DNA of 63,789 nucleotides, filler included, from Platydemus manokwari (taxonomy: Eukaryota), in assembly GCA_037951405.1 (NCBI GenBank). It is 6 parts of 6 records of this genome, joined end to end, with 100 filler letters (N's around TTAATTAATTAA, not from the genome) between each part and the next. Parts side by side here need not be neighbours in the genome. Positions count along the whole stretch, not along the records: positions 18,789 to 31,827 come from JBBMOY011869165.1; 5 more parts are not named here. One strand, 5' to 3'. The notes under the pieces are model-generated. The model was not told the origin of the DNA, did not search any database, and worked only from the letters and a program-made list of their open reading frames with translations. The translations under genes and the position numbers were made by a program. Below are positions 21,793 to 22,017 of the stretch, one piece after another. Numbering within the stretch: position 1 is the stretch's first letter; each line of letters opens with the position of its first letter.

Positions 21793-22017
21793 ATGAAACT
21801 GAGGTAAAATTTATATATTGATTAAATATTTGATATAATTATTGAATGATATTGAAGATATCTATTTTTGATCTGCATTATTTTATTGGCTTTTAACATT
21901 GCCTTTGAGATGGTTTCGGGAACAACTGATTCTTCAGAAAATAGTAAGGATACAAAGAAACCTTTGAGAGAGTATCAGGGCAAAGATGGTAGAACCTATT
22001 ATGACACAGGACGCTAA
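21793..22017 (+). CDS. 56-aa secreted peptide precursor (exons 21793-21803 and 21858-22017): MKLRYLFLICIILLAFNIAFEMVSGTTDSSENSKDTKKPLREYQGKDGRTYYDTGR
   Basis: ATGAAACTGAG|gtaaaa...ttgaag|ATATCTA defines a 54-nt GT-AG intron that gives an exact 57-codon frame. The product has a basic n-region, a hydrophobic h-region and VSG as a likely signal-cleavage site, then KK, GK, GR and terminal GR-stop processing/amidation motifs. AATAAA lies at 22060-22065. Confidence 0.72.

What the first reader, a model, noticed from the sequence alone, without database searches (positions are those of the whole stretch)
21793..22017. Hidden spliced micro-gene encoding a second secreted, probably amidated peptide
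Absent from the ORF track. An 11-nt first coding exon (ATGAAACTGAG), a 54-nt intron of the size typical for this genome and a 160-nt exon give MKLRYLFLICIILLAFNIAFEMVSG-TTDSSENSKDT-KK-PLREYQ-GK-D-GR-TYYDT-GR-stop, followed by AATAAA 43 nt later. Inference: possible products are PLREYQ-amide, TYYDT-amide or the longer PLREYQGKDGRTYYDT-amide. Tyrosines next to Asp could be sulfated. I do not recognise the family.
Basis: partly seen in the sequence, partly recalled or inferred. Interest (0 to 1): 0.82.

Follow-up and report, generated by a model that had tools for sequence, protein, structure and literature searches.

The report
Possible hidden two-exon secreted-peptide gene

Summary
The layout is:
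- ATG at 21793
- an 11-nt coding exon
- a 54-nt GT..AG intron at 13% GC
- a 160-nt exon at 35% GC, with flanks at 21-24%
- a TAA stop at 22015-22017
- AATAAA at 22060

The 56-aa product has four parts:
- a textbook signal peptide
- a hydrophilic spacer
- a KK site
- three Gly-basic motifs, the last being GR-stop

Comparable spliced ORFs appeared in about 0-1 of 150 Markov-simulated 13-kb sequences. All three Gly are followed by K or R (permutation p = 0.007). A clear multi-copy precursor lies 3.2 kb away at 25204-25590, minus strand. Each of its peptides ends in Gly-Arg, so Gly-Arg processing looks to be in use at this locus.

Nothing independent supports the gene:
- The only public run holding the locus is genomic DNA.
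- Every protein, profile, metagenome and literature search was blank.
- The criteria were chosen after seeing the candidate.
- Codon-position GC shows no coding signature.
- The acceptor lacks a pyrimidine tract.

I put a real gene at about 55%, and a real amidated peptide precursor at about 45%. If real, it is an orphan member of a known kind. Interest is modest.

The parts
21748..21753 (+). TATA-like hexamer (TATAAT) 45 nt upstream of the ATG. A second one (ATAAAT) lies at 21771-21776.
   Evidence: Read directly. This is weak evidence, because such strings are common in 23% GC DNA.
21793..21803 (+). Coding part of exon 1: ATG AAA CTG AG (M K L and two bases of R). The start context is tcaATG, with T at -3, which is not optimal.
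21804..21857 (+). Proposed phase-2 intron of 54 nt. Donor AG|GTAAAA, acceptor TTGAAG|A, 13% GC, no clear polypyrimidine tract.
   Evidence: It is present and uninterrupted in a genomic DNA contig of run X1 spanning 21698-21916.
21858..21921 (+). Start of exon 2, covering the rest of the signal peptide: a 16-residue uncharged h-region and c-region E-M-V-S-G. The predicted cut is after Gly25.
   Evidence: using the (-3,-1) rule by script. SignalP was not available.
21922..21960 (+). Hydrophilic acidic spacer (TTDSSENSKDT) followed by the dibasic KK site.
21961..22014 (+). Peptide region: PLREYQ-GK, D-GR, TYYDT-GR. All three Gly are followed by a basic residue.
   Evidence: Permutation p = 0.007 for all three Gly being followed by K/R, and 0.0008 if a C-terminal Gly-basic is also required.
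22015..22017 (+). TAA stop codon.
22059..22070 (+). TAATAAAATGAT, containing AATAAA (22060-22065); putative poly(A) signal. The identical 12-mer sits at the stop of the neighbour gene (25195-25206, minus strand). A copy with one mismatch sits at the end of the decayed paralogue (31042-31053, minus strand).
   Evidence: The total count is not above chance (3 found, 2.5 expected); only the placement is suggestive.
25204..25590 (-). Context: a single-exon 128-aa precursor. It has a signal peptide, an acidic spacer, and seven tandem peptide units that each end in Gly-Arg (six 10-aa FSSS[NH]PNxG-R units after a divergent first unit). It lies convergent to the candidate, 3.2 kb away.
   Evidence: 30-nt period, 6.6 copies. 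Codon-position GC is 0.41/0.54/0.26.

Best explanation
A small, unannotated two-exon gene encodes a 56-aa preproprotein. This is inferred, not shown. The proposed sequence of events is as follows. Transcription starts shortly upstream of 21793, and the 54-nt intron is removed. The MKLR plus hydrophobic N-terminus directs the product into the secretory pathway and is cut after Gly25. A prohormone-convertase-type enzyme cuts at KK, and at one or more Gly-Lys or Gly-Arg sites. A carboxypeptidase trims the basic residue. Peptidylglycine alpha-amidating monooxygenase then converts the exposed Gly into a C-terminal amide. The certain consequence of this route is a peptide ending ...TYYDT-amide: either the 5-mer, if DGR|T is cut, or a 16-mer starting PLREYQ if it is not. 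The sequence anatomy is shown. Every processing step, and expression itself, is inferred from textbook rules of peptide-precursor processing and from the neighbour gene's repeat structure.
For: (1) The reading frame and the splice, stop and AATAAA positions are exactly as described. (2) GC is 35% in the CDS, 13% in the intron and 21-24% in the flanks. The locus is one of only six GC islands in the 13-kb piece, and two of the others are the neighbour precursor and its paralogue. (3) The strict filter found only this locus, with 0/150 and 1/150 hits in Markov simulations. (4) All three Gly are followed by K or R, with p = 0.007. (5) Seven peptide units of the neighbour gene at 25204-25590 (minus strand) end in Gly-Arg, which suggests that single-Arg cleavage after Gly is used in this organism. 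(6) The same 12-mer around AATAAA lies at the 3' end of both genes. (8) Read depth is at single-copy level and the sequence is identical in an independent DNA read set, so this is neither an assembly artefact nor a repeat.
Against: No RNA run holds the locus, and the only holder is genomic DNA. No homologue was found by word search, by HMMER against 1.84 billion representatives, by Pfam, by Atlas features (best score 0.80, at the level of noise) or in metagenome contigs. Codon-position GC is flat at 0.33/0.37/0.35, unlike the neighbour's coding signature of 0.41/0.54/0.26. The acceptor TTGAAG lacks a pyrimidine tract, and the start codon has T at -3. The filters were designed after seeing the candidate. 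At the relaxed setting, 0.3 false hits per 13 kb are expected, so across a whole genome many such chance ORFs would exist. The flanks show no significant similarity to the neighbour gene. The low-variation block in run X1 runs from 21584 to about 23024, well beyond the gene, so it says nothing about constraint.
Confidence: 0.45

Rival explanations
1. It is a chance ORF. In 23% GC DNA, codons for I, L, F, N, K and Y abound, so hydrophobic stretches, AATAAA, TATA-like strings and GT/AG pairs arise freely. On this view the reader picked out a lucky 53-codon open frame in a slightly GC-richer patch.
For: About 15-20 ORFs of 50 codons or more occur in the piece, and nearly all are plainly non-coding. 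There is no transcript evidence and no relatives. Codon-position GC is flat. The acceptor is weak. The relaxed filter gives 0.3 false hits per 13 kb. AATAAA is expected about once per 300 nt at this composition. Other GC islands in the piece (19498-19842, 26928-27260) show no coding sense either.
Against: The hydrophilic, Gly-basic-punctuated tail is unlike the chance ORFs of the piece. Several features coincide: a 13% GC segment exactly between GT and AG, the frame opening at the acceptor, a KK site plus three Gly-basic sites, GR-stop, and proximity to a real Gly-Arg peptide gene.
Confidence: 0.38
2. It is a real, expressed small secreted protein or young lineage-specific gene, but not an amidated signalling peptide. 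Possible roles include an antimicrobial or defensive peptide, a secreted propeptide with another function, or a recently arisen de novo gene of no settled function.
For: It is an orphan in all databases. Its codon usage is not yet gene-like. The predicted products are very short, and cutting at every site gives a meaningless single Asp. By Atlas features, the neighbour's architecture loosely recalls multi-copy antimicrobial precursors of the apidaecin type, at 0.80, which is a weak lead only.
Against: The Gly-basic pattern (p = 0.007) and GR-stop are the specific hallmarks of amidation. A 31-residue acidic or neutral tail without Cys is not typical of antimicrobial peptides.
Confidence: 0.12
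3. Exon 2 belongs to a different gene model, either with a more distant first exon or as part of a longer transcript. The 11-nt exon would then not be the true start.
For: Sixteen other ATG/GT combinations with introns of 221-1120 nt also join in frame to the acceptor at 21858 or at 21910.
Against: All of them have weaker donors and much longer introns. The nine that join the 21858 acceptor give the same processed product after signal-peptide cleavage, so the biological reading would hardly change. The seven that join 21910 would remove the hydrophobic signal-like segment. No further coding-looking exon lies nearby.
Confidence: 0.05

Closest known systems
Precursors of amidated neuropeptides and peptide hormones of animals (a general kind, not a homologous family)
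   Same: A signal peptide, an acidic spacer, basic cleavage sites, Gly before the basic residue as amide donor, and a peptide at the extreme C-terminus ending in Gly-Arg-stop.
   Different: There is no sequence similarity to any known precursor. The precursor is very small and holds single, dissimilar peptides rather than repeats. Expression and processing are unproven.
The neighbouring multi-copy precursor in the same piece (25204-25590, minus strand) and its decayed paralogue (31051-31296, minus strand)
   Same: The start is MKL plus a hydrophobic signal. Peptides end in Gly-Arg. The identical TAATAAAATGAT lies at the 3' end. Both sit in the same 13-kb region.
   Different: The peptide motif is not shared. 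No similarity of coding or flanking DNA is significant (5' flank p = 0.056, 3' flank p = 0.31, whole locus p = 0.24). The neighbour has no intron in its signal peptide and shows a clear coding GC signature. The candidate lies outside the 5.69-kb segmental duplication.
Cnidarian-type neuropeptide precursors, which have monobasic Gly-Arg C-terminal processing (my own knowledge, not tested here)
   Same: They use a single Arg after Gly as the C-terminal processing and amidation signal, as in the neighbour gene and in DGR and TGR of the candidate.
   Different: The organism is unknown because run names are coded. The N-terminal side of the candidate's peptides uses KK and Gly-basic sites, not acidic or X-Pro sites. 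No motif is shared.
Sulfated-tyrosine amidated peptides (cholecystokinin, gastrin, sulfakinin)
   Same: Tyr lies next to acidic residues (E-Y in PLREYQ, Y-D in TYYDT) in a peptide predicted to be amidated.
   Different: The defining C-terminal motifs (W-M-D-F-amide, or Y-G-H-M-R-F-amide) are absent. Sulfation is pure conjecture.

Membership tests
Amidated secretory peptide precursor (a kind, not a homologous family) | N-terminal signal peptide | tested here: met
   K2 and R4 form the n-region. A 16-residue uncharged h-region follows, and V-S-G sits at -3..-1 before Thr26. This was a rule-based check only, as SignalP was not available. Hydrophobic runs are common by chance in AT-rich DNA.
Amidated secretory peptide precursor (a kind, not a homologous family) | Basic cleavage sites flanking the peptide(s) | tested here: met
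   KK at residues 37-38, K46, R49 and R56.
Amidated secretory peptide precursor (a kind, not a homologous family) | Gly directly before the basic residue (amide donor) | tested here: met
   Three of three Gly in the tail are followed by K or R, including GR-stop. Permutation p = 0.007, or 0.0008 with the C-terminal condition.
Amidated secretory peptide precursor (a kind, not a homologous family) | Transcribed and spliced as modelled | not testable with these tools
   Two run searches found only run X1. Its contigs are genomic DNA and contain the intron.
Amidated secretory peptide precursor (a kind, not a homologous family) | Frame and processing sites conserved in relatives | tested here: inconclusive
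   No relative was found in 5.8 billion clusters, in 1.84 billion representatives or in JGI metagenome contigs. The collections may simply lack close relatives of this organism. The neighbour gene, which is clearly real, is equally blank.
Amidated secretory peptide precursor (a kind, not a homologous family) | The organism has prohormone convertase, carboxypeptidase and the amidating enzyme | not testable with these tools
   Only this 13-kb piece is available. Indirect support comes from the seven Gly-Arg-terminated repeat units in the neighbour gene.
Neighbour gene family (FSSS[NH]PNxG-R repeats) | Shared peptide motif or significant sequence similarity | tested here: not met
   Local alignment against shuffles gave z = 0.77 for the whole locus, p = 0.056 for the 5' flank and p = 0.31 for the 3' flank. 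No motif in common was seen on inspection.
Cholecystokinin/sulfakinin-type sulfated peptides | Conserved C-terminal amidated motif with sulfated Tyr | tested here: not met
   The C-terminus reads TYYDT-GR, and no such motif is present. Pfam found nothing.

The most novel reading that the evidence does not exclude
A taxon-restricted signalling-peptide gene that standard annotation cannot see, because its first coding exon is only 11 nt and its product only 56 aa. It would make a short C-terminally amidated, possibly Tyr-sulfated peptide (...TYYDT-amide) of a family with no known relatives. It would sit beside an unrelated, equally orphan multi-copy amidated-peptide gene, in a small cluster of lineage-specific peptide genes.
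Probability: 0.35. Interest if true: 0.45.

Novelty: new member of a known kind. Interest (0 to 1): 0.3.

Why it matters
If real, it adds an orphan peptide to the signalling or secretory repertoire of an AT-rich, small-intron organism. It would also be a concrete example of how micro-exon peptide genes escape ORF-based and homology-based annotation. On its own it does not open a long-standing question. Its value is as a candidate for a peptidomics search list, together with the much clearer neighbour precursor.

Tried and rejected
**Searches that came back blank**
- Pfam on the candidate and on neighbouring ORFs found nothing meaningful. A second batch failed on a coordinate error.
- An exact-product look-up for the neighbour gene found nothing on record.
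- Word-index protein searches with the candidate and with the neighbour were both blank.
- Full HMMER search with the candidate gave 0 hits at E <= 0.001.
- ESM Atlas feature searches gave best scores of 0.80, which is noise level.
- JGI metagenome locus scans with both proteins found nothing.
- A full-text search for the peptide strings found only an unrelated attacin review.
- Rfam found nothing at gathering or at E <= 1, and no tRNA was found.

**Ideas tested and dropped**
- A ciliate or other alternative genetic code: ORFs do not lengthen beyond what chance predicts.
- The candidate as a diverged paralogue of the neighbour gene: flank and locus alignments are not significant.
- Polymorphism in run X1 as a sign of constraint: the variant-free block extends about 1 kb beyond the gene.
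- Other GC islands as conserved exons that might identify the organism: no coding sense.

**Not available**
- The organism could not be identified. From memory, AT-rich invertebrates with roughly 50-60-nt introns would fit, but this was not tested.

Full report
**Observation**

- ATG is at 21793, and the coding exon ATGAAACTGAG runs 21793-21803.
- An intron follows at 21804-21857. It is 54 nt long, starts GTAAAA, ends GAAG, and has 13% GC.
- A 160-nt exon runs 21858-22017 and ends GGA CGC TAA.
- The spliced CDS is 171 nt and gives a 56-aa product.
- AATAAA is at 22060-22065, starting 43 nt after the stop.
- The exon-2 frame opens directly after a TGA at 21853-21855. Its hydrophobic start can therefore be translated only if an upstream ATG is spliced on.
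- Seventeen ATG/GT/AG combinations are possible.
- The ORF is absent from a >=50-aa ORF list.

**Anatomy of the product**

- The n-region is M-K-L-R. A 16-residue uncharged h-region follows, then E-M-V-S-G. Val at -3 and Gly at -1 obey the (-3,-1) rule for a cut before Thr26 (this was rule-based, as SignalP was not available).
- The remaining 31 residues are strongly hydrophilic: an acidic Ser/Thr-rich spacer, then KK, PLREYQ-GK, D-GR and TYYDT-GR-stop.
- All three Gly of this tail are followed by Lys or Arg. Permuting the tail gives p = 0.007 for that, and 0.0008 if a C-terminal Gly-basic is also required.

**Is it more than chance?**

The piece has 23.4% GC. ORFs of 50 codons are common in it and are nearly all nonsense, so ORF length alone means nothing. 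Three other results are more informative.
- GC content: the CDS has 35% GC, against 13% for the intron and 21-24% for the flanks. Only 4% of 160-nt windows reach the GC of exon 2. Windows at or above 33% GC merge into just six islands, and two of the others are the neighbouring precursor and its paralogue.
- Strict filter: this required a basic n-region, an uncharged hydrophobic core, a tail of at least 25 aa with mean hydropathy at or below -1.2, an unspliced reading or a 40-70-nt GT..AG intron, and optionally a Gly-basic end. It found only this locus in the real piece. In 150 second-order Markov simulations it found 0 hits with a Gly-basic end and 1 with any end.
- Relaxed filter: this found this locus and the neighbour gene, against a simulated mean of 0.3 per 13 kb.

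The filters were written after seeing the candidate. The simulations also do not model local GC islands. Over a whole genome, many chance hits would be expected. I read the numbers as roughly 1-in-50 to 1-in-100 for this piece, not as proof.

**Context**

A 128-aa single-exon ORF lies 3.2 kb downstream at 25204-25590, on the minus strand and convergent to the candidate. It is an unmistakable multi-copy peptide precursor.
- It has a signal peptide and an acidic spacer.
- Seven tandem peptide units follow, each ending in Gly-Arg: six 10-aa FSSS[NH]PNxG-R units after a divergent first unit. TRF finds a 30-nt period with 6.6 copies.
- Its codon-position GC is 0.41/0.54/0.26, a clear coding signature.

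A decayed paralogue lies at 31051-31296 on the minus strand. It has no Met, a shortened signal region and only two peptide units. It sits inside a 5.69-kb segmental duplication. The neighbour shows that Gly followed by a single Arg is a recurring peptide boundary in this organism, which is the same signal that ends the candidate. The exact 12-mer TAATAAAATGAT occurs only twice in the window, once at the 3' end of each of the two genes. A one-mismatch copy sits at the end of the paralogue. The count is not above expectation (3 found, 2.5 expected), so only the placement is suggestive. Alignments of the 5' flanks, the 3' flanks and the whole loci against shuffles are not significant (p = 0.056, 0.31 and 0.24). 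The candidate is therefore not demonstrably a paralogue of the neighbour.

**Independent evidence sought and not found**

- Two searches of public runs returned a single holder, X1.
- Laying its contigs shows that X1 is genomic DNA. Contigs cover intergenic DNA and the intron without a break (21698-21916, 0 differences). Depth at the locus is at single-copy level.
- There is therefore no RNA evidence either way.
- The listed variants in X1 stop at 21583 and resume at 22098. However, this variant-poor block continues to about 23024, so it does not indicate constraint on the gene.
- No homologue was found by the word-index search, by HMMER against 1.84 billion representatives, by Pfam, by Atlas features, in metagenome contigs or in the literature.
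- The neighbour gene, which is certainly real, is just as blank. The blanks therefore show that this organism and its kin are poorly represented. They do not show that the candidate is spurious.

**Points against the gene**

- Codon-position GC is flat at 0.33/0.37/0.35.
- The acceptor TTGAAG|A has no pyrimidine tract, and the start codon has T at -3.
- Cutting at all three Gly-basic sites would release a lone Asp, so at least one site cannot be productive.
- TATA-like and AATAAA strings are cheap in this composition.

**Mechanism (inferred)**

If the gene is expressed, processing would run as follows.
1. The signal peptide directs co-translational entry into the secretory pathway and is cut after Gly25.
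2. A convertase cuts at KK and after one or more Gly-basic sites.
3. A carboxypeptidase removes the basic residue.
4. The amidating enzyme converts the exposed Gly into an amide.

The C-terminal GR-stop makes a ...TYYDT-amide end the most secure prediction. Whether this is the 5-mer or a 16-mer beginning PLREYQ depends on cleavage at DGR. PLREYQ-amide is a possible second product. Tyr sulfation is conjecture. These steps rest on the textbook processing rules for peptide precursors and on the analogy with the neighbour's repeat boundaries. None of them was or could be tested here.

**Comparison with the known**

The candidate works like an amidated neuropeptide or peptide-hormone precursor. It cannot be filed in any homologous family. 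It does not carry the motif of the neighbour family or the cholecystokinin/sulfakinin motifs. Single-Arg processing after Gly recalls cnidarian precursors (from my own knowledge). The organism is unknown: run names are coded, and no conserved gene, tRNA or Rfam hit was found in the piece. An alternative genetic code is not indicated.

**Verdict**

- I estimate about 55% that this is a real gene, about 45% that it is a real precursor of an amidated peptide, and about 38% that it is a chance ORF.
- If real, it is a new orphan member of a well-known kind.
- Interest is 0.3.

Noticed in passing
window 25204-25590 (-): A clear 128-aa single-exon multi-copy peptide precursor. It has a signal peptide, an acidic spacer and seven peptide units that each end in Gly-Arg: a divergent first unit followed by six FSSS[NH]PNxG-R units. 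The predicted products are FSSSNPNG-amide-type peptides. It has no homologue in any database searched, and it is the best candidate in the piece for peptidomics.
   Followed up: partly
window 31051-31296 (-): A decayed paralogue of that precursor. The frame is open for 82 codons but has no Met, the signal region is shortened and only two peptide units are left. It is probably a pseudogene.
   Followed up: partly
window 24335-25935 vs 30524-31625; 29117-29403: A segmental duplication about 5.69 kb apart, at 76-89% identity, carries the precursor gene and its flanks. A 287-nt inverted copy of the gene's upstream region alone is also present, 90% complementary to 25649-25935, with no coding part behind it.
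   Followed up: partly
window 23200-24000: A high-copy repeat. Summed contig depth in run X1 reaches about 700 to 12,000 here, against 20-50 elsewhere. There is no ORF and no Rfam hit, so it is probably a non-autonomous mobile element or a satellite.
   Followed up: no
window 24594-24766 and 24871-25044: A direct duplication with 277-278-nt spacing, at 94-96% identity, lies just downstream of the precursor gene's 3' end.
   Followed up: no
window 19498-19842 and 26928-27260: Two further GC islands, reaching 0.35-0.37 per 160 nt against a mean of 0.23. They have no sensible reading frame, no RNA-family hit and no repeat character, and remain unexplained.
   Followed up: partly
window 20692-21583 and 23025-23204: Run X1 shows two sequence versions at roughly equal depth, with about 3-4% differences in these stretches and almost none across 21584-23024. 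Either heterozygosity is patchy or the sample is mixed.
   Followed up: no
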